From NCBI GenBank assembly GCA_002269645.1, contig NIVC01001343.1, positions 124,001 through 188,000 of the forward strand: a stretch of 64,000 nucleotides of DNA, written 5' to 3'. The notes beneath the pieces were generated by a model that was given only the letters and a program-made list of their open reading frames with translations, was not told the DNA's origin and did no database searches. The position numbers were made by a program, and so were the translations under genes. The stretch comes from Macrostomum lignano (taxonomy: Eukaryota). Shown here piece by piece: positions 5,275 through 61,968 of this stretch. Positions within the stretch are counted from its first letter, which is position 1; each line of letters opens with the position of its first letter.

Positions 5275-14757
<9,483 letters not shown>

Positions 14758-14834
14758 GTGAGTCACTTTTGTCACTGGCAATTGTCAGGTGTTGTTAGTA
14801 ATTTGTATAATTTATGCGGTTCCTATTACCTCTC

Positions 14835-15460
14835 GAAACCGGTAAAGACTCTTTCCAAACCGGTAAAAACTCTTTCCAAATCAGTAAACACTCTTTCCAA
14901 ACCGGCAAACACTCTTTCCAAACCGGCAAACACTCTTTCCAAACAGGTAACCACTCTTTCCAAACCGGCAAACACTCTTTCCAAACAGGTAACCCACTCT
15001 TTCCAAACCGGCAAACACTCTTTCCAAACCGGCAAACACTCTTTCCAAACCGGCAAACACTCTTTCCAAACAGGTAACCACTCTTTCCAAACCGGCAAAC
15101 ACTCTTTCCAAATCAGTAACCACTCTTTCCAAACAGGTAACCACTCTTTCCAAACCGGCAAACACTCTTTCCAAACAGGTAACCACTCTTTCCAAACCGG
15201 CAAACACTCTTTCCAAACAGGTAACCCACTCTTTCCAAACCGGCAAACACTCTTTCCAAACCGGCAAACACTCTTTCCAAACCGGCAAACACTCTTTCCA
15301 AACAGGTAACCACTCTTTCCAAACCGGCAAACACTCTTTCCAAATCAGTAAACACTCTTTCCAAACAGGTAACCCACTCTTTCCAAACCTGCAAACACTC
15401 TTTCCAAACCGGTAAACACTCTTTCCAAACCGGTAAACACTCCAAACCGGTAACACCCTT
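14835..15460. repeat. 21/22-bp minisatellite (TTTCCAAACCGGCAAACACTC)
   Basis: Direct tandem units. Confidence 0.97.
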
Positions 15461-16177
15461 TCAAACCACCGGGGACAACGATGGGACAAAAGTGTTTAAA
15501 AGGAAGTAACAATGTGTAAAAGGTAAGCTAAGGTAAGTTTACGTATAAAACTCTTTCCATACGTTTTCATTTTTATCGTATTAACTAACGAAGTGGACTT
15601 CACATTAATAATTAACTTTTGTGTAACTTGTAAAGAGTTTTATTTATTTTTGATATACGCTGTAAAATTAATGTTATTGCATTGTCAAATAGTCTTCCGA
15701 TATTATGTACAGATAAAATATATCGCTTGTCTAAGAATGCCCATTAAAATAATATTTGGACATAAACTAATATGACTTTATCGGATTCATTTTCCATGAA
15801 TCGGTTTGATGCTGGTTCAACACGGAAATAACTACGAGCGTCATGAGCTCTAAAAACAACCTACTCAAGAAAGAAAATGAAAAATGAATGAATGCACAGC
15901 TGCCTTTCGTAATGCACTACTAAAAGTAAAAACACGCGCAAACACTACAATTGCAGGCGCAATGTGTTCTCCGAGCCTATATGCCTTATATTTAGCTGGG
16001 GAAGTGTACCTCATCTTCTCAATCAGCAAAAACAATGAATTTTACGTTGCCGACGCGTTTCGTCGTCACACAGACGTCAACAGGGGTCAATTCATCTAAG
16101 ATTTTTTTATTAGAGGCAGGGGGGTTGTGTGCACCCTGGCGCACTTTAAGCGACATTGGCACACAACCGGCGAGAGG

Positions 16178-18372
16178 CATTGCCCAAAATTTCTCCTCAT
16201 GGCAATGACCCATGGCAATGGCCGGCCATTGCCTAGAATTCCAATTCCAATGCAACCAATTAATTCAAGCCAGTTTTTATCCAGCATCTTGCAAAGCATA
16301 TCTTGCATCAGTCAATTCAAAACGTTTATTTTAAGATGTAAATAATTAAACTGGCACAGGAATTGCAAAATCGACAGTACAAAAAGCACAGTGTCAGTAT
16401 ATCATGTAAATTTTTGTCGGTGATGAACATCATACTGGTCGAGCAAAGTACTAAAAGTCATTAAATAAAAAATATTAAACTAGACTGTCGTTCTTATTCT
16501 TTCAGTAATTCTACGAGTACAATTTGCTGATTCCTGTAGAAGTAAAGATTGCATGCCTAATTAAAGGAACATCCGTGAAAGGTGCAATTGTAAGGCAAAC
16601 TTCGTACCAACAGAATAGGCAGCTTCAGTGCTAACACTAACCTCCGTCGATACTGCAGTCTCACCGACGATCTCAACAGCATCAGCATGTTCGGGTGGCC
16701 CAGCATCTTGCTCTAGATCATGACGATTCAATGCCACCTGAACAGACTCACTCGTCTTTTGAAGCGACCGGTCGCGACGCTTGGCTAGGTACCTCCTAGT
16801 CGTTCGCTCGCTCAGCTGTCCAGTAATGCTCATTATATCGCTCATGCTGTGCCCTGCCGCCTCGAGATCGCATATTCGCGTGACCCTGTTTTAGAGTGCA
16901 AATTTATATAGTTGGATTCATGAGTAATTGGTAACATAACATGTATCATAACATAATTAAAGTTACTATTATTAATTTATCAGTCTTACCGAATGCAATG
17001 ATTCGTGTAGGTCTTCGCAAGTCCCGCCTTCGTACTCAAGTTTCTCATGAAGCCACTCAGATAATTCTCTCCACGGTTCTGCTTCGAGGAGAAAACAGGG
17101 CCTCCATCGTTGCGGCTGGCCAAAGGACGAGGAAACAGATTGTTGTCCTTCGTTGTAACTGGAAGCAGCTTGAGGTATTTCTCCACCTTTTCCACGTCGT
17201 AAATTCTGGCCTGCTTGTTGTCCGGCTGCTTCTTGGCCTTCTCTGGATCTGCTGACTTATTTTTTTAGGGCAACGGAGGCAGACAGTAGTACGGCTTTCC
17301 ATCAGAGTCGACGTGCAATTGAAGTGAGCTTCTATCCTTCAAGAACTTGAGGTGCTCCTGGCCTCGCTCGCCAAAGCTGTATATGATGTAGAATAAGAAT
17401 TTGTCCTGCTCAACTTCAGCTGTGCTGCCTTGGAAGTAGATCATCAGCTTCCTCATGTCCTCCTCCTCGATTGGCTCAAACTGCTGCGTCCTCCCACCAC
17501 TCTGGTGAAAGTCTCGAACCTTCACACGCAGCATGCTATTTGCAGAAGAAAAGTCTTCTCCATTGATGATGTCAACGGTTAGCTTCTCGATCATCCGCAA
17601 ATAGCGCTGCAGTCCAGCCCTGATGCACACCAGCGATGCAGGCGAGTAGGGTTCGCCGTCAATCTTCTTCAGTTTAAAGTAGAAGTAGCGAATGTATTGG
17701 TTGAGCACCGAATTCGGAATTGTTTGCAAATTGCGCTGAAGATTTTCCTCTTTGAGGAATGTCTTGAACCGCTTTCCATGGCTGATCATCTGCTTCCTGC
17801 TGTCTGCTGGTAGGCTGTCAATCTCGGCGATGTCCATGGCGCTGATATCTACGCCGCCTTCCTGCAGGAGCGGCAGATGCTCATCGGGCTCGGGCTCCTT
17901 TTGAATGAATTCGAGAAATCTAGCGAACTCGTCGTCCCTTCTGTCATTGTAAGAAGCCTCCGAAACAAAATTCAATTCGTCCTTAGTCACGTTGCCCAGC
18001 TCACTGCAGGGCAAATGCTTCCAATTAATGAGCGGTGCCTCCATCTCTGCAGCCGTCCGCTTTTCTCTATCTGAGATTTGACCTCTAGACACGCAAATAT
18101 TTATATTTGTAATTAATTTAGGGGTGGGTGCAGAGTAAGGGGTGGGTGACTTCAGGTGCGCGACTTAAAGGTGAGACATAGGCGAGGTGGAGGTAACCTT
18201 ATCTCAAACCCCCTTAGCAGCATCGACTGATAAGAATTCACGATAGTGTACATAAAGTGCGTAGATTACGTAAGAGTTTTGAAATTTTAAGCAATGATGC
18301 TCATCGGAAGTCAGAGTTTAAGGCAATGGCCTTTGACACGAGCGGCGGTAGCCGCTTGGTCATGAATCCATT
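16178..18372 (-). mobile_element. Crypton-type DNA transposon (~2.2 kb) encoding a tyrosine recombinase
   Basis: Insertion in the SINE at gaggCATT|actgccc with CATT at both ends (16178-16181, 18369-18372); no TIRs; contains the YR gene. Confidence 0.82.
16561..18044 (-). pseudogene. Crypton/DUF3504-like tyrosine recombinase, ~459 codons, one intron, one in-frame nonsense codon
   Basis: Exons 18044-16990 and 16885-16561; GT-AG intron 16989-16886 splits the HCIR motif. Motifs GEPYSPASL..IRAGLQRYL, FGERGQE, KNKS, LFPRP, RGENYLSGFMRNLS..AGL, TNHCIR, ITGQLS, RRY. TAA at 17267-17265; the same frame continues after it. A further upstream exon is possible (acceptor near 18086). Confidence 0.85.
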
Positions 18373-19071
18373 ACTGCCCATTCCGCCGACTCCCCTGAGT
18401 AGGCATACAAGCGCGCGGATACGTACGCAGGCACACACTCACACAGGAGTGTACAGCGGCCCTAACTTTATATTATCGTTTTTAGGCCTGTACACTTCAC
18501 TGTGCCTTGGGGGTTGGCCCTCAAGGCCGTTAATTGCACGAGCAGAGCCAAGCCGAGATTCCAATTCAGTCCCAAATTAAGGTGACTGCACTTGGAATCG
18601 AGCCTGGGTCGCTGGCACACCAGAGCAGCTGCGCTACCGCTGGGCTACGGCCCCCCTATTCATCTAAGTTACATGTAGCCCAACAAGCAATATAGTTATC
18701 CCGCGTAATTATAAATTTATCAAGAACAGTAAGTGAAATAGTACGAGAGTAAGTCAGGAAAGAGAACAATCGATCAGGGGAATGTAAAGTCACGATCATA
18801 AAAAGCCCAAAGTCTGGTCTGATTCAGTCCGGTAAAGATTCCTACGTTCAGAAGGAATACGAGGAAGGCAGATCGAGAGGGAGAGAGATAGACGCTAGGT
18901 CCAGCTCACAGTACTCTGAGCTCACGTTCCACCCCATTGCTAACATTGTTGTACGAGTACATTCAAGTTCGGTTTGTGCATTCTAATGAGCCTGAAACTA
19001 TATTAAGCACTTGGTCATGAATCGATCTAACACTTTGAACGGCTGAATCCGCTTTACAACACGCTTTACAC

Positions 19072-20135
19072 CAAGGGTCGGCAAACTCCGACCCGCAAAG
19101 CCTCTCTATCCGGCCCTCGGGTCTTTTGAAACTTCTCAGTTCTTCTCAGTGCCTCTTCTCAGCTCTCTTCTCTCCTCTCTCCCTTGTTATCTCTCCTCTC
19201 TTCTCTCTCCTCTCCTCTACCCTCCTCTCCTCTCCTCTCCTCTCCCTCTCCTCTCCCTCTCCTCTCCCTCTCCTCTCCTCTCCTCTCCTCTCCTCTCCTC
19301 TTATCTCCTCTCCTCTCCTCTCCTCTCCTCTCCTCTCCTCTCCTCTCCTCTCCTCTCCTCTCCTCTACCCTCCTCTCCTCTCCTCTCCTCTCCTCTCCCT
19401 CTCCTCTCCCTCTCCTCTCCCTCTCCTCTCCTCTCCTCTCCTCTCCTCTCCTCTTATCTCCTCTCCTCTCCTCTCCTCTCCTCTCCTCTCCTCTCCTCTC
19501 CTCTCCTCTCCTCTCCTCTCCTCTCCTCTCCTCTCCTCTCCTCTCCTCTCCTCTCCTCTCCTCTCCTCTCCTCTCCTCTCCTCTCCTCTCCTCTCCTCTC
19601 CTCTCCTCTTATCTCCTCTCCTCTCCTCTCCTCTCCTCTCCTCTCCTCTCCTCTTATCTCCTCTCCTCTCCTCTCCTCTCCTCTCCTCTCCTCTCCTCTC
19701 CTCTCCTCTCCTCTCCTCTCCTCTTATCTCCTCTCCTCTCCTCTCCTCTCCTCTCCTCTCCTCTCCTCTCCTCTCCTCTCCTCTCCTCTCCTCTCCTCTC
19801 CTCTCCTCTCCTCTCCTCTCCTCTCCTCTCCTCTCCTCTCCTCTCCTCTCCTCTCCTCTCCTCTCCTCTCCTCTCCTCTCCTCTCCTCTCCTCTCCTCTC
19901 CTCTCCTCTTATCTCCTCTCCTCTCCTCTCCTCTCCTCTCCTCTCCTCTTATCTCCTCTCCTCTCCTCTCCTCTCCTCTCCTCTCCTCTCCTCTCCTCTC
20001 CTCTCCTCTTATCTCCTCTCCTCTCCTCTCCTCTCCTCTCCTCTCCTCTCCTCTCCTCTCACTCCTTCTCTGGCCCGCAGTCATGCGCTGGGTTCTCTAT
20101 CTGGCCCTTGGAGGTAAAAATTTTGCCGACCCCTG
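19072..20135. mobile_element. hAT-type MITE carrying a (CTCCT)n microsatellite
   Basis: TIRs CAAGGGTCGGCAAA / TTTGCCGACCCCTG; degenerate 8-bp TSD ctttacac / ctgtgcac (6/8). Confidence 0.7.
19140..20060. repeat. (CTCCT)n pentanucleotide microsatellite
   Basis: Direct reading; source of the SPLLS / GEERR pseudo-ORFs. Confidence 0.98.
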
Positions 20136-20596
20136 CTGTGCACCCACAAGCAGATAGGCATAATTACTACCTTCTATCCCATCCTAGCTCGCAGTTGGCA
20201 ATGGGGTGGAGCCGAGAGTGAGCTCAGAGTACTGTGAGCTGGACCTGCTGTCCTATAGCCTGTCCTGCGTTGCTTTGCAGGCAAGCGGCTGCGTTCAAGA
20301 TTGGGTAGTGTAGTTGAGAGTCTATCCTCATTGGTTGTCCGTTTGCTATGGACAGCTTATTTAATATATCGACGTTTCGGGAAGCTAATCCACTCACTAC
20401 ATGCAAAACGACTCCTCTAACTACTCGTGCTATAAGCCTAAAGAATTCCACTTTAACACAAATGGCGATTGTAGATCAGTGTCAAACTGTGTTATTCTCG
20501 TCTCAAACAAAGCAGTGTGGCACAAATTGAAAGACATTGACTCTGACAGGTTTTATCCCCTGATCATAACAAATTCCCAGAATATTGCCAATGAAT

Positions 20597-21909
20597 CTGC
20601 TTAATAAGTTCGCGGAAAACCAAACTTATCTTCAAGCGAATCAAACGAAATTTTATGAACTTTTTCCTTAGGATATTGGCACCTTTCACACAAATTTTCA
20701 GCCAGTTTGGCCAAAATGTTGCGACGCAGTGGCCGAAGAAGTGATAAAACCCCCGCTCCAGTGCTGCGCCTGACTGAGCGCGACAGGCGAGTCGCAATTC
20801 TGGTCCAATTCCGGCTTGGCCTGTCTGCCTCCGAATACTTGCAGACGCTTCAAAAGGCCCTTGAGAGTGAAGCCCCATCCCAGACGATGGTGTACAAGTG
20901 GTTCGGTCGATTCCGCTCCGGCTGTCTGGAGCTGGACGATGATGAACGTGAAGGCCGTCCAAATTCGTCCATCTCGGACACGACTGTGGCCAGTGTCCGA
21001 AAGCTGCTCGATGCAGACCGCCGAGTGACGATTCGGGAAATCGAAAAACATGTCGGGATTTCGGATTCAAGCGTCATTACTATCTTGCCCGATCACCTCG
21101 GCATGAGGAAGGTGTCAGCTCGCTGGGTCCCTCATCAACTGAAGCCGGCTCAGATGCAGGCCCGCGTGGATTTTGCGAACTTCATGCTCGACAAGTTCGA
21201 CGCAGGCGCCTCAAATTTCGTGGACGGCATCCTCACAGGGGATGAAACGTGGGTGTACTTTTATGATCCCGAGACAAAAGTACAAAGCAAGCAGTGGGTC
21301 GCCTTTGAGGAGGATTCGCCCTTGAAATTTCGTCGCGAGCGAAGCGTCGGCAAAGTGATGGCTGCGGTGTTTTTCCGTCGGTGCGGAATTCTGCCGCCCG
21401 TTCTGCTCGAGGAGGGAGCCACAGTGACTGGCAGCTGGTACTCCAGTGTCTGCCTGCCGCAGGTGCTGGAATTCCTGCGTCGAGAGCGGCCAAAGACCAG
21501 AGATCGCGGCATTTTCCTGCACCACGACAACGTGCCCGCTCACAGAGCCAGTGTCACGCAGCAGTTCTTGGCATCAACTGAGCTGACTCTGCTGCCGCAT
21601 CCGGCCTACTCGCCCGACCTCGCGCCTGCAGATTTCTTTCTCTTTCCGAAGATCAAGAAAAATCTGAAGGGGAAGCGCTTCGACACTCGTGAGGAGCTGG
21701 AACAGGCGTTGAATGCGGAGCTGGAAGCCGTCACAAAGGCGGAATTGAGGGACTGCTTTGCGGCATGGTTTCATCGGATGAAGAAATGCGTTGATCTGGC
21801 TGGGGACTATGTTGAGAAGTGCCATTAGGTTGGGCTAAGTGTGTGTAAAATTTCACGACTGTGCGATAACTATAAGTATGTTTTTCCGCGACTTATTAAG
21901 CAGCCCTCG
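20597..21909 (+). mobile_element. Mariner (Tc1/mariner, DD34D) transposon
   Basis: Right TIR reverse-complements to CGAGGGCTGCTTAATAAGTCGCGGAAAA and is followed by TA (21910-21911). Left TIR CTGCTTAATAAGTTCGCGGAAAA lacks the outer CGAGGG and the TA. Confidence 0.95.
20716..21828 (+). CDS. Mariner transposase, uninterrupted 370-aa ORF
   Basis: HTH region (VYKWFGRFRSG, EREGRP), WVPHQL, ILTGDETWVYFYDPE, HHDNVPAH, YSPDLAPADF; 34 residues between the 2nd and 3rd catalytic Asp. Confidence 0.96.
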   Translation: MLRRSGRRSDKTPAPVLRLTERDRRVAILVQFRLGLSASEYLQTLQKALESEAPSQTMVYKWFGRFRSGCLELDDDEREGRPNSSISDTTVASVRKLLDADRRVTIREIEKHVGISDSSVITILPDHLGMRKVSARWVPHQLKPAQMQARVDFANFMLDKFDAGASNFVDGILTGDETWVYFYDPETKVQSKQWVAFEEDSPLKFRRERSVGKVMAAVFFRRCGILPPVLLEEGATVTGSWYSSVCLPQVLEFLRRERPKTRDRGIFLHHDNVPAHRASVTQQFLASTELTLLPHPAYSPDLAPADFFLFPKIKKNLKGKRFDTREELEQALNAELEAVTKAELRDCFAAWFHRMKKCVDLAGDYVEKCH

Positions 21910-22693
21910 TAAGAATCAAACGCATAAAAGGATAATTAAAATCACAGCAACGAGCCAGGACTTCAGCGAGGATCATCCAACAGTTCGAGATGTTCTGCAA
22001 CACTGGCTGCACCTGCGGTCGTTGGGAAGGCCCAGTAACCAACGAAAGGAGGACCAGCTTTTCTTCAATTTGAAGGACAGGTTTAATAATGACATTTTTA
22101 CACAATCCAAAGTAGCTTATCGGTTTGAATCAAACCCACATTCCCCCAGTGTTTTGTCCACAATTTGTGATGGTAGAAAGCCATTGGCTAAAGAGGATAT
22201 TGTTAAGTGCTTGCAAGTATATCGCTATGCTTATTACTTTTCAAACAGTAGTACTGGCGATGTAGGTCCACTTGTAATTGTTGATGGGCCCAACCTTTGC
22301 GCTAGCAATGCTTTTTCAACTGTTGTGGATCAAATTCGCACAGAGTTACCGAATTCTCACATTTTAACGGTGTTTAAAAATTCTCAAATTAAATACCACG
22401 ACAACTTAAAAATTATTGAATCCAAAGGCTTTTTCCCGAGTTTTGGACATCAAAACTTATCTGAATCTGGAGATGATGATGACGACATGGAAGCCCTCCG
22501 CTTGACCAGACAGTTTGATGCTGCCTTTATTTCCAATGATAAATTTTCTCAGAAGAAATATAGACAGATTAAAGATGCCGTAAAGAATTACATTTATGAG
22601 TACCTGGTTTATGAAGACAAAGCTTTTCTTATTCCACCCCGAGTTCCCTCCGAGTTCCTCCCAGGGGGTCACCATAATAAACCTGAAAGATAG
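21878..22693 (+). CDS. Intronless stand-alone NYN/PIN ribonuclease domain ORF, Regnase-1 (ZC3H12)/N4BP1 type; flanked and possibly truncated by TEs
   Basis: PLVIVDGPNL (cf. RPVVIDGSNV), GDDDDDMEALRLTRQFDAAFISNDKFSQ (cf. [25 protein letters not shown]), YIYEYLVYEDKAFLIPP (cf. LLMYSFVNDKFMPP). No CCCH finger. AT-rich relative to host exons. Confidence 0.75.
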   Translation: MFFRDLLSSPRKNQTHKRIIKITATSQDFSEDHPTVRDVLQHWLHLRSLGRPSNQRKEDQLFFNLKDRFNNDIFTQSKVAYRFESNPHSPSVLSTICDGRKPLAKEDIVKCLQVYRYAYYFSNSSTGDVGPLVIVDGPNLCASNAFSTVVDQIRTELPNSHILTVFKNSQIKYHDNLKIIESKGFFPSFGHQNLSESGDDDDDMEALRLTRQFDAAFISNDKFSQKKYRQIKDAVKNYIYEYLVYEDKAFLIPPRVPSEFLPGGHHNKPER

Positions 22694-23187
22694 CAACTCC
22701 AAAAGCACTTCCCATCATAAACCCGAAATATCTCAATCCGAAATACCACAACTCTGAAAACCAACATAGTGTTGGACATTGCTAGCATTTTCGCAGGTTG
22801 TGCTTTTTTGGGTTTGTGATGCCCCCCCCCCGATCCCCCGAGGGGTCGCTTCACAACCTCGAAAAGCACTTCCTTTCACAAACCCGAAACTGGCTGGCAG
22901 CTGGCTTCACAAGCTCGAAATTTCACAACCTCGATAACCATTCTAGCAGCCCACTTTCACAAACGGTTTTCGAGGTTGTGAAATTTCGAGCTTGTGAAAT
23001 TTCGAGCTAGTGAAGTCGCTTGCTAAAATTTTCGACGATTTGAAATGTCGAGCTTATGAAGTTTCGGGTTTGTGAAAGTGGCTGCTAAAATGGTTTTCGA
23101 GCTTATGAAATTTCGAGCTTAATAAGTAGCTGGTTTCGAGGTTGTGAAATTTCGAGCCTGTGAAAGCAAACCCCCCCCCCCGAGTTC
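22647..23187. mobile_element. Composite MULE/foldback-like non-autonomous element with 15-bp subterminal repeats
   Basis: TTCACAACCTCGAAA-type repeats face inverted TTTCGAGCTTGTGAA-type repeats; G/C-run termini; CCCCGAGTTC occurs at 22637-22646 and 23178-23187 (putative TSD). Confidence 0.65.
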
Positions 23188-24288
23188 ATTTGTTTATATG
23201 CAGGTGTTAGGTACATGCAAAATGCTGAGGGCCTTGATTTTGTAAGTAGATATTTTCGTGGTTAGACCATATGGCTTACAAAAGGCAGAGTTGCAGAAAA
23301 GAATGGTAGCTCGTAGGTGGCAAAGCTCAAACTGGTCTGTGTGAGCGGCTATATAAATTACGTTTTCTGTTTTTGTTAATTACCAGCTAATTTGCCAATT
23401 GGTTCCAATTGTGCTTTTGCACGTTTTGTTGAGTTAATGCATGGGGTTCCAATCAATATAATTTTCCTTCGGTGTTGAAAATTTAATTCTTTTTGGCTTG
23501 CTAAAACGGATAGGTTTAGTGGCATATACTAATTAATGAAAAATATGGTTTGGAGTAGCGCTAAGATTTTCAAGTGTACGATGTCAAGATTTTTAGAATG
23601 AGCAATTATTTTTTCTTGGCAAAATATATGGAGTTTGTGCCGTCAAGCAGTGAATGGTGTGAGATACAAACGCCGTTTTTTGAGTCGGAGTATACTTACG
23701 ATCATGGGTTTACGTTTTTGTTTGTGAGTCCCTAGTTTTTATTACTTTGATTACTGACAGTCTGGACCTTTCAGATAAGAGCATAAAACTACGAAATCGA
23801 GTCCTCTTAAAGTATAGCTAGTCTGTGCTGATCGTGTACTCTGTGTACTCTGTACATTGCTTAGTATAAAAAATGAGCATTTACATACATGGTTAAAAAA
23901 ATTTTCGAGTGAGATGACAAGATAGCGGTACCTAGGCCTGTAGTATAGAGTATACTTTACATTGCAGTCAATACGACGTAAACAACACTGCAACTACATG
24001 TACTGGTACCATCAGGTCGCGATCATTTTTAGCCAATTCTGGACCTACGAGGGCAAATAAATACTTTTCTCTATTACTGCAGCTGTACCGCTATATGGTT
24101 TTTACATGTGTCATACATGTACATGCAGCTCTCGAAACAAATCTCTAAGATCGTGTAGGCTATGCATGGGTACTGTACATTGTACTTACATGTACTGCTC
24201 ACTTCAAATGATTATTATCGTAATATGTGGTTGCATCCACATTGCACGCTATATCGTCGATACCATGATAAGTGATTTTTAGCAGCGA

Positions 24289-25110: not shown

Positions 25111-27173
<2,063 letters not shown>

Positions 27174-50100: not shown

Positions 50101-53100
50101 GTAGCAGGCTATTTTTATTCTGTATTTTGCCAAGAATTCATTGAAACCCGTGGAAGGAAGAAACAATCTTCCAGAAGCGATCTGTCACGTACCTGTTGCT
50201 TAAGATCTACAATGACGAAAGTACGAAAGTATAATAAAACTTTTTCGACTTCAATGTCTCAGAGCTACTTTAAATAAAGATTCATGACGCACAATATTGA
50301 AAAACCTCAGATCGTTCATCTTGGCGCTGGGACTTTCACTAAAACAACACTACGTGACTCCGTGATCGACTTCTCAGCGGATTTGTTTGCTGAGTACAAC
50401 GGTATCCTGGTGCCGAAGCCGAAGCCCTCAACCAAGATGTGGAACGTGTTCTACCCGCTCAGCTGGCAGCTGTGGCTGTGTCTGGCTGCCTCTCTGTTTG
50501 TGGCCGCATTCTGCGTCTGGATCATGGCCTACTACTCCCCGTTCTCAGCCGTCAATCTGCAGTTGGAGTGCGCCATAACTGACGAGGTCAACTATTTGGA
50601 ATATTTGTGGACCGTGACCGGCTGTCTGATGCAGCAAGGCCAGGACTTTTATCCGTTTGCTAGTTCTCCCAGGATTTCGCTGTGCTTTTGGTTCTTCTTT
50701 GTAGTGATCATTGGAGCTTCTTACACAGGTGATTCCGCAAGGGCGTTTTACAAACTCGAAATTTAACATGGTCGAAAAGACTTGCTAGTCGCGGAATCAG
50801 TAGGAGTCCAGCAACTAACTTGATACTTCTAACGTAATTTACAAGAGCAAATCAGTGTACAGACATTACCTCTTACACTTGACAGCCTTCCTCACCTCTA
50901 TGCTGACCGTTGCCGTGACCCAGCCAACAATCAAATCGCTGGAAGACCTGGTGTCCCAGACTGTAATTAAACCTGGCGCCATACCCGGCACGAATATTTA
51001 CCATCTGATGAAGTCACCCTTAAACAGTGTAGGTATCTACGACCAGATTGGAAAGCTGCTTGTTGATGCTCCGAATTGTCCGTTTGAGGTGAGCCAATTG
51101 TGGTTTTTTGAGCAAGATTTTTACATTTACACGAGTGTAGCTATAAGCGTACATCCCTGCATGGACTGTGTCTAAGTTGTCACCGCTAGAACTACCCAGA
51201 TTTTTTAGATTTCGTTCAATGATACACGAAAACCTTGAGATTCCAGAAAGAAATCTATTAAGAAAACTAAGCACTTTTGATGCACCAGAAAGAGTTAATC
51301 AGATGCTTATTTGAATTAAGAGTATAAAATCTCAAAATGCAGTCGCAAGGTGAAAAAATGGCCAGCCGACGGCACAAAACTTAAACGCTGCCATTGTGCA
51401 TCAACACATCAAGAGCTGTGTACAGCATGCAAGTAACAATCTCAATTTGTGCAAAAATCCATCGAATCGTGGTTTAATGCAAGTTTAGACAATTTGTACG
51501 TGCGTACGTTTTTCTAACCTATTTTAATGTATTGGACTAAGGCTTCTTTGTAGTTTAGTCTTACTTAGTAAGCTTTGGCTTACTTCATTCTCAACTATTT
51601 CACATGTATAAGATTTATTATAGAGGATCTAGACATAAATCCCGATCGCCAGGCTAAGGTACGAGCTATGCGTAGTCTATAGTAGTCCTTGATAACTTTA
51701 ACCAGTCGCTATACTTTTATCCCTGTAGCTCTACCACTGCTTGGGGCTGCTAAAAGCTCTATACAGCATTAACTAGTGGTCCTTGGCTGCTGCTCTATCA
51801 CAGTAAGGTGAACTCATGGAAGTGATGGATCACTGTGGCAGTCTTGATCTCTTAACGACGCAGTCAGCCTATAAATCTATAAGTAAAAACTTCAGCCCAA
51901 TCGTGCCTAACGTCGCTTCTATCGGACTTAAAAGGAAAAACTCCTGTCCCTAAGGGCAAGGGGTTTTTTTATTAGAGGCAGGGGGTTGTGTGCACCCTGG
52001 CGCACTTTAAGCGACATTGGCACACAACCGGCGAGAGGCATTACTGCCCATTCCGCCAACTCCCCTGAGCAGGCACACAAGCGCGCGGATACGTACGCAG
52101 GCACACACTCACACAGGAGTGTACAGCGGCCCTAACTTTATATTATCGTTAGGCATGTACACTTCACTGCGCCTTGGGGGGTTGGCTCTCAAGGCCGTTA
52201 ATTGCACGAGCAGAGCCAAACCGAGATTCCAATTCAGCCCCAAATTAATGTGATTGCACTTGGAATCGAGCCTGGGTCGCTGGCACACCAGAGCAGCTGC
52301 GCTACCGCTGGGCTACGGCCCCCCTAGGGCAAGGGGTTAGCAAGCTTTTTTTGCTAGGGCAAGGGGTTAGCAAGCTTTTTTGACTCAAGGTCCAGAGAAA
52401 GAATCCAGTGCATGACTGCAGGACAGAAGAGGGGAAAAAAGAGAAGAGAAGAGAAGAGAAGAGAAGAGAAGAGAAGAGGAGAGGAGAGGAGAGGAGAGGA
52501 GAGGAGAGGAGAGGAGAGGAGAGGAGAGGAGAGGAGAGGAGAGGAGAGGAGAGGAGAGGAGAGGAGAGGAGAGGAGAGAAGAGAAGAGAAGAGGAGAGGA
52601 GAGGAGAGGAGAGGAGAGGAGAGGAGCGGAGAGGAGAGGAGAGGAGAGGAGAGGAGAGGAGAGGAGAGGAGAGGAGAGGAGAGGAGAGGAGAGAAGAGAA
52701 GAGAAGAGGAGAGGAGAGGAGAGGAGAGGAGAGGAGAGGAGCGGAGAGGAGAGGAGAGGAGAGGAGAGGAGAGGAGAGAGGCAACATCGAAGTTCACCAA
52801 AATTCACCCAGGCTTTGGAGAACAGCGAAACCGCATGCTTAGGAGACGTCTCTCGGCTGCAGTACTTTGCCAAGCTCAACTGCACTAAAGTCTACCTGGC
52901 AGAAGTGCAATTCAACGCTGCCACCGTAGCATTTATCTATCCCGAGGATGCAATCTACGGAGAAGCCATCAATTTCTAGTGAGTCCATCGGCTAATGGAG
53001 ACATGCTTAAGTGTGTAATACTACTAGTCAGTTTAATTCAGCCTAGTCCTGAATTATTCGATTTGGAAATCGATGAAAGCTGCTTCGTGTTCTTTTTAGT

Positions 53101-59481: not shown

Positions 59482-61968
59482 TCACTTCACCCGCCAACTG
59501 CATGCGGGATTCACTCGTCGCACAACCGACACCACAGCGTTTGGTTTCAACCGGCGTTCGCAGAGGTTACCACCGACCTCGTACAGGCAGCTGCCATTGC
59601 TATCGCATCCGACTCGTCTAACAACTTCTTCGGCCGTCGTATTCGAAGCTATTAAAACTGATTTTACGATTTCCGACTCGTGTGCCGTTAAAATGACTCG
59701 CACCTGGATTATTGAACTGTTGCTTTGCTGAGCCGTTGGAGACAGGGGCGAGAGAGACGAGGATGTGGCTGAGAACGGAGAGGACGTTGGCGAAGGTTGC
59801 TGTTGCTGCTGGCAATGAAGATGCCCTTTATGCTGATGCTGACGGCCACCGGCGATGCGTCGTAGCAGCCTCACCGCCGCGTGCGGCTGACGCTGCTGGG
59901 CCGCCTCGGCCGGAATTGGCAACGAGGGCGGAGCTTGTCGACGAATCTGTTGCAGAGTGAAGTCTGGAACAATCCAGACGATGCTGCGATACTTGATGAG
60001 CATCTCGACGGCTGTGATGAGGTCCTGACTGTCGGTGAGCAGCTGTTCCGGCGAATGAGCTGGAACCAGACTGGGAGCAATCACCGTTGCCAGAGCTTGC
60101 AGAGTCATCTGATTCTGATCACGGTGAGAAACAACCTGTGTCGAGAATAATTTAAGGTATAACAAATAAATAAATCAAAATAAAAAATCAATCAAAAGTA
60201 CACTCAATGCTTGCTTACTTTAGCTAAAAGCTCCACCAACTCCCGTAGTACACTACTGAACTCGCTTGGCAGTAGTAATACAAACAAATTCAGACCAAAT
60301 AGTCGATCGGTTTCATCACATATCCGAGGTAGGCAGGTGAACCGTCCTGCGTCGCGAGATGAGACAGCCAGCGGACGCGGCAGTTCCCGCAGGCAGGCCT
60401 TCAACAAGGTGGATGCGTCGTGCGGATCAATGGCCGAAGCCGCGGCGGCAGCTTCAACAACTTCCGGTCGAGCTCGACGAAAAGCGCGGACTCGAGCGGC
60501 CGATCCGCAGACGCGAAACAGGCCGCGAGTTTTCAGCGCGTCCTCGCGGCTCAAGCGCTCCGTCAGCACTCGAACAAGTCGCAGAAGTCGGACGGTTTTA
60601 GCCTCGACTGTCCGACTAGATGGTTCCGACGAGTCCAGTTTGTCTTCGTCGGGCACTGAAAGCGTTTGGCTGCGCTGCTGCAAACGAAGGAACCGGCGCT
60701 GGTGCTTGGTAGTGACGGCGCTTCCGTTGGAGGTCGCTACAGATGCCTGGCAACAGCGGTGCTTGTCGAATAAAGCCGTCAACTCCAGGCGGGCCAGACC
60801 GCGGACTCTTCGTCTGTCCAACTCGGCCAGGTCTTCGATGTCCGTGTCGCCCAGGGGATTGTTGTCGGGCAGCACGAAGGTCGGATAGGCTCCCATTCCG
60901 TCATCGTTATTGTCCGGACTTTTGACGTCGTTGCACTGTCCTCCTAACGTCCAATCTGCGGACTTTGGCGCAGATGCGTTGATGCCGTTGCCATTTGTGT
61001 GGCCATTGTTGTTGCTGTCTTCGAAGACGCAGCTGCTGCAGCAGCGGGACGATGCAGCTGAGTTGTGCTGTGGGTTTCGTGTGGAATATTTTAATTAATT
61101 TAAAAAACTATCATACGAACTGAAGTTGTAACTTTTGCTTTAGAATAAAACTCGAATCAAAAGTTAAATCTGCAAAACGGAGACTTTCCACGAACGACGA
61201 AAACTATCGAAGATCCAAGATTTTTCTCTTCTTTTTGAGTGAAATTTGAGTTAGGTAAAAACAAGAAAAAATGTGAACGCTTCACCGCTGAAGGAGTTTA
61301 ATTGCATGAGTGTCCAGCGGAACTTACCATTGAGTCGACGGTTCCATCCGATCCATTGTTACTGTCGACACCATTGCTGTTCTGGTCACAGTCATTCAAC
61401 AAGAGCCTCGTTTCCGGCTGCTCCGGCTGCTGGAAGCTGAACATTCGTCTAACGTCCTGCCTAGGACAGTCGCGCGACGCGATAGCAGTTGCAACCCGTC
61501 GAGTCACCGAGTTTAGCTGTCGGCCACGAGTTGCCCGCCTCAACCAGGGCGGCTCCGCCTCCGATTGGCCGGCCAACTCGCAGGCGTCGCACCGTTGATT
61601 CGGTGCATCGTCGACGTTGACCCATTGACTGGCATCAACGGAGCGTCGCCACTGGCTGGTGTCCAACGTGGCCAACTCCCATTGGCTGACGTCGGCAGAT
61701 CGACGCCAATTGCAGCGAGGAGTGCCGACACCGCCGATGCCGTTGAGGCCGCCGTTCATTGCAGCAACCGGGCGCTGCCGAAGATGCGACATCTCGGAAT
61801 CACTTTGAGGTCGTCGAAACGACAGACCCTGCTGCTGCTGCTGTTGAATGTTGGCCACTTTGCAACTTTTCGATCTGAATTTAGTCGTTTGGGGATAAAA
61901 TTGGTGAACGTCCTCAGCGACACAGTCCCACAACCAGCACTGACAGCAACTCTGCTTATAACTGGCTC
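59482..61968 (-). CDS. ARHGAP18: RhoGAP of the ARHGAP18/28/40 (Drosophila conundrum) family; 5' exon(s) not located
   Basis: Phase-consistent exons 61968-61328, 61067-60219, 60135-59482. LARLELTALFD, GLFRVCG (Arg finger), HDASTLLKACLRELP, NQMTLQALATVIAPSL, MLIKYRSIVWIVP and the family-specific tail LYEVGGNLCERRL..VNPACSWRVK. The symbol is family-level only. Confidence 0.9.

What the first reader, a model, noticed from the sequence alone, without database searches (positions are those of the whole stretch)
20348..23220. Stand-alone, intronless Regnase/N4BP1-type NYN RNase embedded in TE-rich DNA
Seen: ~245 stop-free codons from 21911 to 22646 with VDGPN, DDDDD and SND motifs. Established: these correspond to Regnase-1 D141/N144, D225/D226 and D244; the D248 position is Gln here. 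This family degrades mRNAs and viral RNA, normally within multi-exon genes with CCCH, KH or UBA domains. This ORF has none of these, no introns, and lower GC than host exons. Removing the mariner may rejoin an upstream 65-codon frame (20401-20596; in register if 9 bp were lost), and removing the 3' insertion gives the ending ...IPPRVHLFICRC*. Inference: a member of a lineage-specific expanded RNase family (antiviral or anti-TE effector) or cargo of an unrecognised mobile or viral element.
Basis: partly seen in the sequence, partly recalled or inferred. Interest (0 to 1): 0.72.

Follow-up and report, generated by a model that had tools for sequence, protein, structure and literature searches.

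The report
Transposon-split orphan gene, possible NYN RNase
This is a dead copy, split by a mariner transposon, of a single-exon gene known only from the flatworm Macrostomum lignano; its C-terminal part resembles a Regnase-type RNase domain only weakly, below statistical significance, so the finding is mostly ordinary.

Summary

The window is Macrostomum lignano. A collinear duplicated block (GenBank NIVC01001407.1) carries the same gene uninterrupted: 346 codons, no intron, annotated as hypothetical protein BOX15_Mlig013088g1. The window copy is a pseudogene, with one DD34D mariner inserted at a TA and one frameshift.

No other relative was found among 5.8 billion clustered proteins or 1.84 billion representatives. 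So there is no sign of an expanded family, and nothing suggests mobile or viral cargo.

Standard tests for a Regnase/NYN domain all fail:
- Pfam, NCBIfam, PADLOC and PDB sequence searches find nothing.
- AlphaFold2 confidence is pLDDT 32-36.
- Foldseek finds nothing.

A non-standard search with tandem copies of the domain makes PF11977 (RNase_Zc3h12a) the top Pfam family for the intact copy. The DD and SND motifs fall at the expected profile positions. Twelve decoys that keep only the three motifs never recover the family. However, the score is no higher than shuffled decoys get for unrelated families.

The NYN reading is therefore plausible (about 0.5) but unproven. Substitutions between the two copies show no clear purifying selection (dN/dS 0.64).

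The parts
20348..22693 (+). Broken copy of a Macrostomum-specific single-exon gene (346 codons in the intact duplicate BOX15_Mlig013088g1). Breaks: 1 transposon insertion and 1 frameshift. There is also 1 in-frame 6-nt indel. No stop codon lies inside the aligned frames.
   Evidence: tblastn of P0001 aligns in three pieces and two frames around the insertion. Nucleotide identity to L001 10001-11041 is 96-97%. The database search gives 94% amino-acid identity.
20599..21909 (+). Mariner (Tc1/mariner, DD34D) inserted at a TA inside the gene. Terminal inverted repeats lie at about 20599-20620 and 21880-21909. One end is incomplete at its outer edge.
   Evidence: The element is absent from L001, whose empty site reads GAATC-TA-AGAATC. 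Inverted repeat pairs I5 and I7. Pfam HTH_48 7.6e-8 and Transposase_1 4.6e-9.
20716..21828 (+). Mariner transposase reading frame, 371 codons, open from ATG to stop (0 stops, 0 frameshifts seen). The catalytic D, D and D have 34 residues between the last two.
22265..22645 (+). Candidate PIN/NYN-like domain (GPLVIVDGPN ... DDDDD ... ISND ... IPPRV). Motifs: VDGPN 22280-22294, DDDDD 22472-22486, SND 22532-22540, and Gln at the fifth acidic position 22550-22552.
   Evidence: Coordinates. PF11977 appears only in tandem-copy scans. For the window copy it scores 37.0 bits at rank 6 (x7), and the C-part scores 31.8 bits at rank 2 with PIN_5 at rank 3. For the intact copy it scores 53.0 and 42.5 bits at rank 1. 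Single-copy scans list nothing.
22646..23177 (.). Block of inverted and direct 16-nt units (TTTCGAGSTTGTGAAA type). It is flanked by CCCCGAGTT at 22637-22645 and 23178-23186. It supplies the last 15 codons and the stop of the ORF as it stands.
   Evidence: It is present at the same place in L001 at 96% identity, so it is older than the duplication.
19191..20060 (.). (CTCTC)n microsatellite immediately upstream of the gene (a neighbour, not part of it). It has no aligned counterpart of comparable length in the duplicate.
   Evidence: TRF finds period 5 with 173 copies. There is a gap in the collinear alignment between window 19185 and 20033.

Best explanation
Window 20348-22693 is a pseudogene copy of a taxonomically restricted, single-exon gene of Macrostomum lignano.

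Shown:
- The genome holds a second, collinear copy of the whole region.
- In that copy the gene is an uninterrupted 346-codon ORF carried by a GenBank gene model.
- In the window a DD34D mariner landed in a TA after codon 84, and one frameshift lies in the 5' part. This copy cannot make the protein.

Inferred (about even odds): the C-terminal 130-140 residues are a very diverged PIN-like nuclease domain of the Zc3h12a/NYN type.
- A hydrophobic strand ends in Asp (LVIVDGPN).
- An acidic run opens a helix (DDDDD).
- A second hydrophobic strand ends in S-N-D exactly 18 residues later.
- This is the geometry with which ZC3H12A holds one Mg2+ through its site-A aspartates.
- The fifth acidic position is Gln.

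If this is right, the intact copy would encode a Mg2+-dependent endoribonuclease. It has no recognisable RNA-binding module of its own, so targeting would depend on the unknown N-terminal 190 residues or on a partner. The window copy would be only its dead duplicate.
For: Duplicate and pseudogene status:
- The only homologue is P0001, 94% identical, encoded at L001 10001-11041.
- L001 is collinear with window 6007-33336 at 92-98% identity.
- L001 has an empty TA site.
- The P0001 alignment changes frame once in the 5' piece.
- M. lignano is a hidden tetraploid (PMC5704211). Its assembly holds 180 Mb of duplicated blocks at 95% identity or more, and its GenBank models are transcript-based and exclude repeat-overlapping transcripts (PMC5730564).

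NYN reading:
- Tandem-copy Pfam scans of the intact copy's domain rank PF11977 first of 24,736 families: 53.0 bits at x10 and 42.5 bits at x7.
- Protein residues 87-136 align to profile positions 88-139 of 154. By spacing, this places the DD and SND motifs at the family's D225/D226 and D244 positions.
- The Asp spacings of 18 and 4 residues equal those of ZC3H12A.
- The window copy gives PF11977 at 37.0 bits (rank 6). Its C-part gives 31.8 bits (rank 2), with a second PIN-like family, PIN_5, at rank 3.
- Twelve decoys that keep VDGPN, DDDDD and SND in place but shuffle everything else never list PF11977 or any PIN-like family.
Against: - No single-copy search reaches any threshold: Pfam at E<=10, NCBIfam, PADLOC and PDB phmmer at E<=10. 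I know the PDB to hold ZC3H12A entries such as 3V32 and 3V33. I did not confirm that the tool's copy contains them.
- The amplified PF11977 score corresponds, by my estimate, to roughly 10 bits per single copy, an E-value of order 1. Fully shuffled decoys reach 58-69 bits for unrelated families.
- With the C-part alone, PF11977 is only third.
- The N-terminal part carrying VDGPN never retrieves PF11977 or any NYN/PIN family.
- One arrangement of the window copy did not list PF11977 at all.
- AlphaFold2 is uninformative (pLDDT 32 and 36), and Foldseek finds nothing at E<=0.001.
- hhalign against YacP-type NYN proteins gives 6% probability.
- The hypothesis was chosen by looking at this same sequence, so the rank-1 result is not an independent test.
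- dN/dS between the copies is 0.64, not different from 1 (p=0.24). The coding part is no more conserved than its flanks.
Confidence: 0.5

Rival explanations
1. Same gene history: an orphan single-exon gene, with the window copy killed by a mariner. But the protein is not a nuclease. The VDGPN, DDDDD and SND pattern and the weak PF11977 match are chance resemblances in a young, fast-evolving or non-functional ORF.
For: - All standard searches are negative.
- The PF11977 score is at the level of the best chance family in shuffled decoys.
- The N-terminal half gives no support.
- There is no codon bias: GC3 is 0.40 against a window background of 0.43 and 0.57-0.63 for host exons.
- dN/dS is 0.64, not different from 1, and the coding region diverges at least as fast as the flanks.
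- No homologue exists outside the species.
- DDDDD is a low-complexity run that offers several registers for a DD match.
Against:
- A second PIN-like family appears for the window C-part.
- None of 12 motif-keeping decoys recovers either family.
- The Asp spacings equal those of ZC3H12A.
- The alternation of hydrophobic strands and helices, with acidic residues at strand ends, is what a PIN-like fold requires. This rests on reading the sequence and on a low-confidence AlphaFold2 secondary structure.
Confidence: 0.4
2. The ORF is cargo of an unrecognised mobile or viral element, or one member of a dispersed, expanded RNase family.
For: - The ORF is intronless, has lower GC than host exons, and lies among repeats.
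- A repeat block with 9-nt flanking direct repeats sits at its 3' end.
- PMC5499597 describes some vertebrate NYN genes (N4BP1, KHNYN, NYNRIN) as probably of retroviral origin.
Against: - There is only one copy in the window and one in L001.
- Both lie at the same position in a block that is collinear for about 27 kb.
- No terminal repeats bracket the ORF.
- No relative was found among 1.84 billion protein representatives, in the phage records or in the plasmid records.
- The GenBank model set excludes transcripts that overlap annotated repeats.
- I could not search the whole M. lignano genome, so unannotated extra copies are not excluded.
Confidence: 0.05
3. The ORF is the terminal exon of a conventional multi-exon ZC3H12/N4BP1 orthologue whose other exons lie nearby.
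For: None found.
Against: - The intact copy starts with ATG and is a complete 346-codon CDS in the GenBank model.
- Upstream and downstream ORFs are minisatellite translations without KH, UBA or CCCH hits.
- No CCCH pattern lies closer than about 26 kb, and the two matches found are not zinc fingers.
- A conventional orthologue would have hit PF11977 and many animal proteins.
Confidence: 0.02

Closest known systems
RNase_Zc3h12a NYN domain (Pfam PF11977: Regnase-1/ZC3H12A-D, N4BP1, KHNYN, NYNRIN)
   Same: - The order of a hydrophobic strand ending in D-G-x-N, a DD pair opening a helix, and a hydrophobic strand ending in S-N-D.
- The DD-to-D spacing of 18 residues, with the next acidic position 4 residues further on.
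- PF11977 is the top Pfam family for the intact copy in tandem-copy scans, aligned at profile positions 88-139.
   Different: - No significant profile or pairwise match.
- The first Asp is 67 rather than 85 residues before the DD pair.
- The fifth site-A Asp is Gln.
- There is no CCCH finger and no KH or UBA domain. A 190-residue N-terminal part has no recognisable domain.
- The gene has a single exon, and its only known relative is the duplicate in the same genome.
Taxonomically restricted (orphan) genes of flatworms
   Same: - No homologue outside the species in 5.8 billion clustered and 1.84 billion representative proteins.
- No codon bias.
- Weak or absent constraint between duplicates.
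- Annotated only as a hypothetical protein.
   Different: The ORF is long (346 codons) and has an alpha/beta-like pattern with catalytic-looking acidic residues. A random or de novo ORF need not show that.
Tc1/mariner DD34D transposons (the element that splits the gene)
   Same: TA target, short terminal inverted repeats, about 1.3 kb long, and a single transposase ORF with an HTH_48 N-terminus and a DD34D triad.
   Different: One terminal repeat is incomplete at its outer end. No second copy lies in the window or in L001. I did not determine its family or copy number in the genome.
NYN_YacP-type bacterial NYN domains
   Same: They share the LVIVDGxN strand motif. This is by construction, because that motif was used to fetch them.
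   Different: hhalign gives 6% probability. The alignment does not place DD and SND on the YacP acidic motifs.

Membership tests
RNase_Zc3h12a / Regnase-N4BP1-type NYN (PF11977) | Significant match to the family profile (gathering score 23 bits) | tested here: not met
   Single-copy hmmscan at E<=10 lists no PF11977 for the window ORF, for P0001 or for the domain alone. PF11977 appears only when 7-17 tandem copies are scanned, at 31.8-53 bits for the whole concatenate. Shuffled decoys reach the same level for unrelated families.
RNase_Zc3h12a / Regnase-N4BP1-type NYN (PF11977) | Site-A acidic residues (D141, D225, D226, D244, D248 of human ZC3H12A; PMC5499597) | tested here: inconclusive
   Four of the five positions can be matched: D of VDG, DD, and D of SND. 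The fifth is Gln. The DD and SND placement is backed by the HMM coordinates (87-136 to 88-139) and by identical spacing. The D141 equivalence rests on the motif alone, and the N-part does not retrieve the family. No residue-level alignment to a real family member could be made, because the tools returned no ZC3H12A sequence.
RNase_Zc3h12a / Regnase-N4BP1-type NYN (PF11977) | PIN-like alpha/beta fold | tested here: inconclusive
   AlphaFold2 gives pLDDT 32.2 for the full length and 36.5 for the domain with the 2-sequence alignment. Foldseek against the PDB gives no match at E<=0.001 and no PIN or NYN entry among the 50 best matches listed. There are no homologues from which to build an alignment.
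RNase_Zc3h12a / Regnase-N4BP1-type NYN (PF11977) | Sequence similarity to solved family members | tested here: not met
   phmmer against 177,635 distinct PDB sequences at E<=10 lists only unrelated chance hits, for the whole ORF, for the domain and for the C-part. HMMER's filters mean that only matches with P below about 1e-5 would have been shown.
RNase_Zc3h12a / Regnase-N4BP1-type NYN (PF11977) | Accessory RNA- or ubiquitin-binding modules typical of the animal members (CCCH finger, KH, UBA/CoCUN) | tested here: not met
   There are no Pfam hits in the rest of the protein. No CCCH pattern lies within about 25 kb. These modules are typical of the animal members but do not strictly define the domain.
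RNase_Zc3h12a / Regnase-N4BP1-type NYN (PF11977) | Mg2+-dependent endoribonuclease activity | not testable with these tools
   No biochemical data exist. No paper or supplement searched mentions Mlig013088.
Other NYN/PIN-like families (NYN PF01936, NYN_YacP PF05991, PRORP, PIN_x) | Profile match | tested here: not met
   None is listed in single-copy scans. In tandem scans only PIN_5 appears, once, at 28.9 bits for the window C-part. hhalign against 15 YacP-type sequences gives 6% probability.
Tc1/mariner (DD34D) transposon (the insertion) | TA target site, terminal inverted repeats, and a transposase with an HTH plus a DDD triad with 34-residue spacing | tested here: met
   Empty TA site in L001. 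Inverted repeat arms at 20597-20620 and 21880-21903. HTH_48 and Transposase_1 hits above their gathering scores. D-to-D spacing of 34.

The most novel reading that the evidence does not exclude
The intact duplicate encodes a working, stand-alone ribonuclease with a Zc3h12a-type NYN domain so diverged that no sequence method recognises it. It would be restricted to Macrostomum and coupled to a novel 190-residue N-terminal module. That would make it a new, orphan-looking branch of the PIN-like nucleases, possibly acting on transposon or viral RNA in a genome that is more than half repeats.
Probability: 0.12. Interest if true: 0.55.

Novelty: new member of a known kind. Interest (0 to 1): 0.25.

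Why it matters
As it stands, the window holds a transposon-killed duplicate of a hypothetical gene. That is an everyday event in a recently duplicated, repeat-rich genome.

It would matter somewhat if the NYN reading were confirmed. It would then be an example of a catalytic PIN-like domain that has drifted beyond the reach of HMM searches while keeping its acidic geometry. It would also add a stand-alone, accessory-domain-free Regnase-like nuclease to a regenerating flatworm model. Even then the interesting copy is the one on NIVC01001407.1, not the one in this window.

The tandem-copy scan with motif-keeping decoys may be of use for testing other pre-specified weak domain hypotheses.

Tried and rejected
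1. Single-copy profile and pairwise searches found no NYN or PIN family. These covered Pfam, NCBIfam and PADLOC at E<=10, and PDB phmmer on the whole ORF, the domain and the C-part.

2. AlphaFold2 was run on the full protein and on the domain with the only available (2-sequence) alignment. pLDDT was 32 and 36, and Foldseek against the PDB was meaningless.

3. tblastn of the domain against phage and plasmid records returned only chance hits to unrelated genes.

4. I tried to obtain a real ZC3H12A or N4BP1 sequence from the tools for a direct alignment, and failed.
- PMC5499597 has no supplements held.
- The PMC4772114 supplement contains no sequence.
- PDB and UniProt accessions are not accepted by get_proteins.

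5. I scanned genome contigs with a pattern back-translated from the window's own LVIVDGxNL. It fetched YacP-type NYN and FEN-type proteins, not Zc3h12a-type ones. hhalign against the YacP set gave 6%.

6. I looked for expression data by gene identifier in full texts and in two papers' supplements. Nothing was found.

7. The 'expanded family' and 'mobile cargo' readings were considered and set aside.

8. The 'recent 3' insertion' reading was set aside because the block is shared by both copies.


Full report
**What is there**

The region was read and its ORFs listed. A stop-free frame runs from 21839 to 22693 on the + strand. It contains VDGPN (22280-22294), DDDDD (22472-22486) and SND (22532-22540). 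A Gln lies four codons after the SND aspartate.

A 1.3-kb element lies between this frame and a short upstream frame (20348/20401 to 20604). It has inverted ends and a 371-codon open frame. That frame hits the Mos1-type HTH_48 and Transposase_1 models above their gathering scores, and it has 34 residues between its last two catalytic aspartates. It is a DD34D mariner.

**Origin and the second copy**

A search of 5.8 billion clustered proteins returned one hit. It is a 346-residue 'hypothetical protein BOX15_Mlig013088g1' of Macrostomum lignano, 94% identical over the whole query.

Its locus (L001, NIVC01001407.1) is collinear with window 6007-33336 at 92-98% nucleotide identity. So the window and L001 are two copies of one duplicated block.
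- M. lignano is a hidden tetraploid (PMC5704211).
- Its assembly holds 180 Mb of non-repetitive blocks duplicated at 95% identity or more (PMC5730564).

In L001 the gene is one uninterrupted, intronless 346-codon ORF. The place where the window has the mariner reads GAATC-TA-AGAATC there. This proves three things:
- The upstream frame belongs to the gene.
- The mariner inserted into it at a TA.
- The window copy is the derived, broken one.

Counting breaks in the window copy against L001 gives one transposon insertion, one frameshift, one in-frame 6-nt indel, and no stop inside the aligned frames. One end of the mariner is incomplete at its outer edge. Its transposase frame shows no stop or frameshift.

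**The 3' block**

The last 15 codons and the stop come from a 532-nt block (22646-23177) built of inverted 16-nt units. It is flanked by CCCCGAGTT on both sides. But the block is present at the same position in L001 at 96% identity. If it is an insertion, it predates the duplication, and the annotated CDS of the intact copy also ends inside it.

**Is it a family or a mobile cargo?**

No.
- HMMER run against 1.84 billion representatives without any word index found only P0001 itself.
- The window and L001 each hold one copy.
- No terminal repeats bracket the ORF.
- Phage and plasmid records give only chance hits.
- The surroundings are mostly micro- and minisatellites. Several long 'ORFs' nearby are simply their translations.

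I could not search the full M. lignano genome, so unannotated extra copies are not excluded.

**Is it a conventional ZC3H12/N4BP1 gene?**

No.
- The CDS is complete on its own.
- Nothing nearby encodes a KH, UBA or CCCH domain.
- The only two CCCH-like patterns in the window are 26 kb or more away and are not zinc fingers.

**Is it an NYN RNase? Standard tests**

Every standard test is negative.
- Pfam at E<=10 on the window ORF, on P0001 and on the domain alone.
- NCBIfam and PADLOC.
- phmmer against all PDB sequences at E<=10, for the whole ORF, the domain and the C-part.
- AlphaFold2, which had only a 2-sequence alignment, gave pLDDT 32 and 36.
- Foldseek found nothing.

However, HMMER's filters hide anything with P above about 1e-5. 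For one pre-named family a weaker match could still carry weight, so I looked below the filter.

**Below-threshold test**

I scanned tandem concatenates of the domain exactly as it stands. The aim was to let weak per-copy scores add up and pass the filters. This is non-standard, so it was calibrated with decoys.

Results for the intact copy's 142-residue domain:
- PF11977 (RNase_Zc3h12a) is the first of 24,736 families: 53.0 bits at x10 and 42.5 bits at x7.
- Residues 87-136 align to profile positions 88-139 of 154. This is the stretch from the DD pair through SND to the C-terminal strands.
- By my arithmetic on HMMER's multi-hit length model, this equals roughly 10 bits for one copy, an E-value of order 1. 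This figure is an inference, not a tool output.

Controls and sub-tests:
- Fully shuffled decoys reach 58-69 bits for unrelated families. The size of the score is therefore what chance gives. Only the identity of the family is notable.
- Twelve decoys that keep VDGPN, DDDDD and SND in place and shuffle everything else never list PF11977 or any PIN-like family.
- Shuffling only the N-part lowers the score from 53 to 35 bits.
- The C-part alone ranks PF11977 third.
- The N-part alone, which carries VDGPN, never retrieves it. That test has little power, because each local hit pays a large entry cost.
- The window copy gives 37.0 bits at rank 6. Its C-part gives 31.8 bits at rank 2, followed by PIN_5 at 28.9 bits. 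Another arrangement of the window copy did not list the family at all. The signal is fragile.

**Geometry**

PMC5499597 gives the site-A residues of human ZC3H12A as D141, D225, D226, D244 and D248. Here the last Asp of the run is 18 residues before the Asp of SND, and a Gln lies 4 residues after it. These match the D226-D244-D248 spacings. The Asp of VDG lies 67 rather than 85 residues upstream.

I could not make a residue-level alignment to a real family member. The tools did not yield such a sequence, and I did not write one from memory.

A genome scan seeded with the window's own strand motif fetched YacP-type NYN proteins. hhalign gave these 6% probability.

**Selection and composition**

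Between the two copies there are 19.2 non-synonymous and 7.8 synonymous differences, giving dN/dS of 0.64.
- This is not different from 1 (p=0.24).
- An average constraint of 0.2 or stronger is rejected (p=0.004).
- Coding divergence is 2.6%, no lower than the 0.7-2.0% in the flanks.

One branch is a pseudogene, so moderate constraint on the intact copy remains possible.

GC is 0.40 and GC3 is 0.40. That is close to the window background of 0.43 and far below the host exon-like ORFs, at GC 0.50-0.58 and GC3 0.57-0.63. The frame itself is not a chance product (P = 2.6e-10 for 346 open codons). GenBank gene models for this assembly derive from transcripts and exclude those overlapping annotated repeats, so the intact copy is probably transcribed. 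I found no expression data for it.

**Verdict**

Firm:
- This is a mariner-split pseudogene of an orphan, single-exon Macrostomum gene whose intact duplicate is already in GenBank as a hypothetical protein.
- The databases searched show no expanded family.
- Nothing found points to mobile cargo.
- It is not an exon of a conventional Regnase or N4BP1 gene.

Open: whether the C-terminal domain is a very diverged Zc3h12a-type NYN nuclease. I put that at about 0.5. The named family comes out on top, at the right profile positions and with the right spacings, and motif-only decoys do not reproduce this. But no test reaches significance, the N-terminal half is silent, the fold could not be predicted, and the hypothesis was drawn from the same sequence.

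Interest is low to moderate. What would settle the question is listed under next steps.

Noticed in passing
window 15981-18741 (ORF 17265-18092, - strand): A stretch of about 2.7 kb is present in the window but absent from the duplicate L001 (gap in collinearity). It holds a 275-codon ORF with a sub-threshold QRICH1-domain hit (24.7 bits against a cut-off of 30.8, E 2.6e-5). It may be a fragment of another inserted element.
   Followed up: no
window 25111-27172: A (TAGA)n microsatellite of 515 copies with 100% matches. It gives a spurious 704-codon ORF on the - strand. The matching gap in the collinear alignment is about 1.4 kb in the window and about 0.7 kb in L001.
   Followed up: no
window 10609-11326, 12973-13398, 14836-15467: Minisatellites of 36, 30 and 21 nt translate into long repetitive ORFs, for example [12 protein letters not shown] repeats. 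They are conserved in position in L001. Whether any of them is coding is unknown.
   Followed up: no
window 13707-14798 (+): A 363-codon, Cys-rich, non-repetitive ORF with no Pfam hit. It lies in a GC-richer stretch and could be an exon of, or a complete, unannotated gene.
   Followed up: no
window 50284-50766 (+); 59482-60165 and 60204-60896 (-): Host gene exons. One is a ligand-gated ion channel domain (Lig_chan, 3.2e-17). The others are a RhoGAP domain (4.3e-14) and an RHG40-like C-terminal ubiquitin-like domain (1.8e-10). I used them as the GC and GC3 reference for host exons.
   Followed up: partly
window 51964-52329 (-) and L001 5685-6050: A 366-nt segment of L001 matches a distant, inverted place in the window at 96% identity, instead of the collinear position. 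It is probably a dispersed repeat or a small rearrangement between the duplicates.
   Followed up: no
window 20599-21909: The mariner's transposase frame is fully open, and its GC (0.56) is far above that of the gene it interrupts (0.40). No second copy lies in the window or in L001. I did not look at its family, copy number or age.
   Followed up: partly
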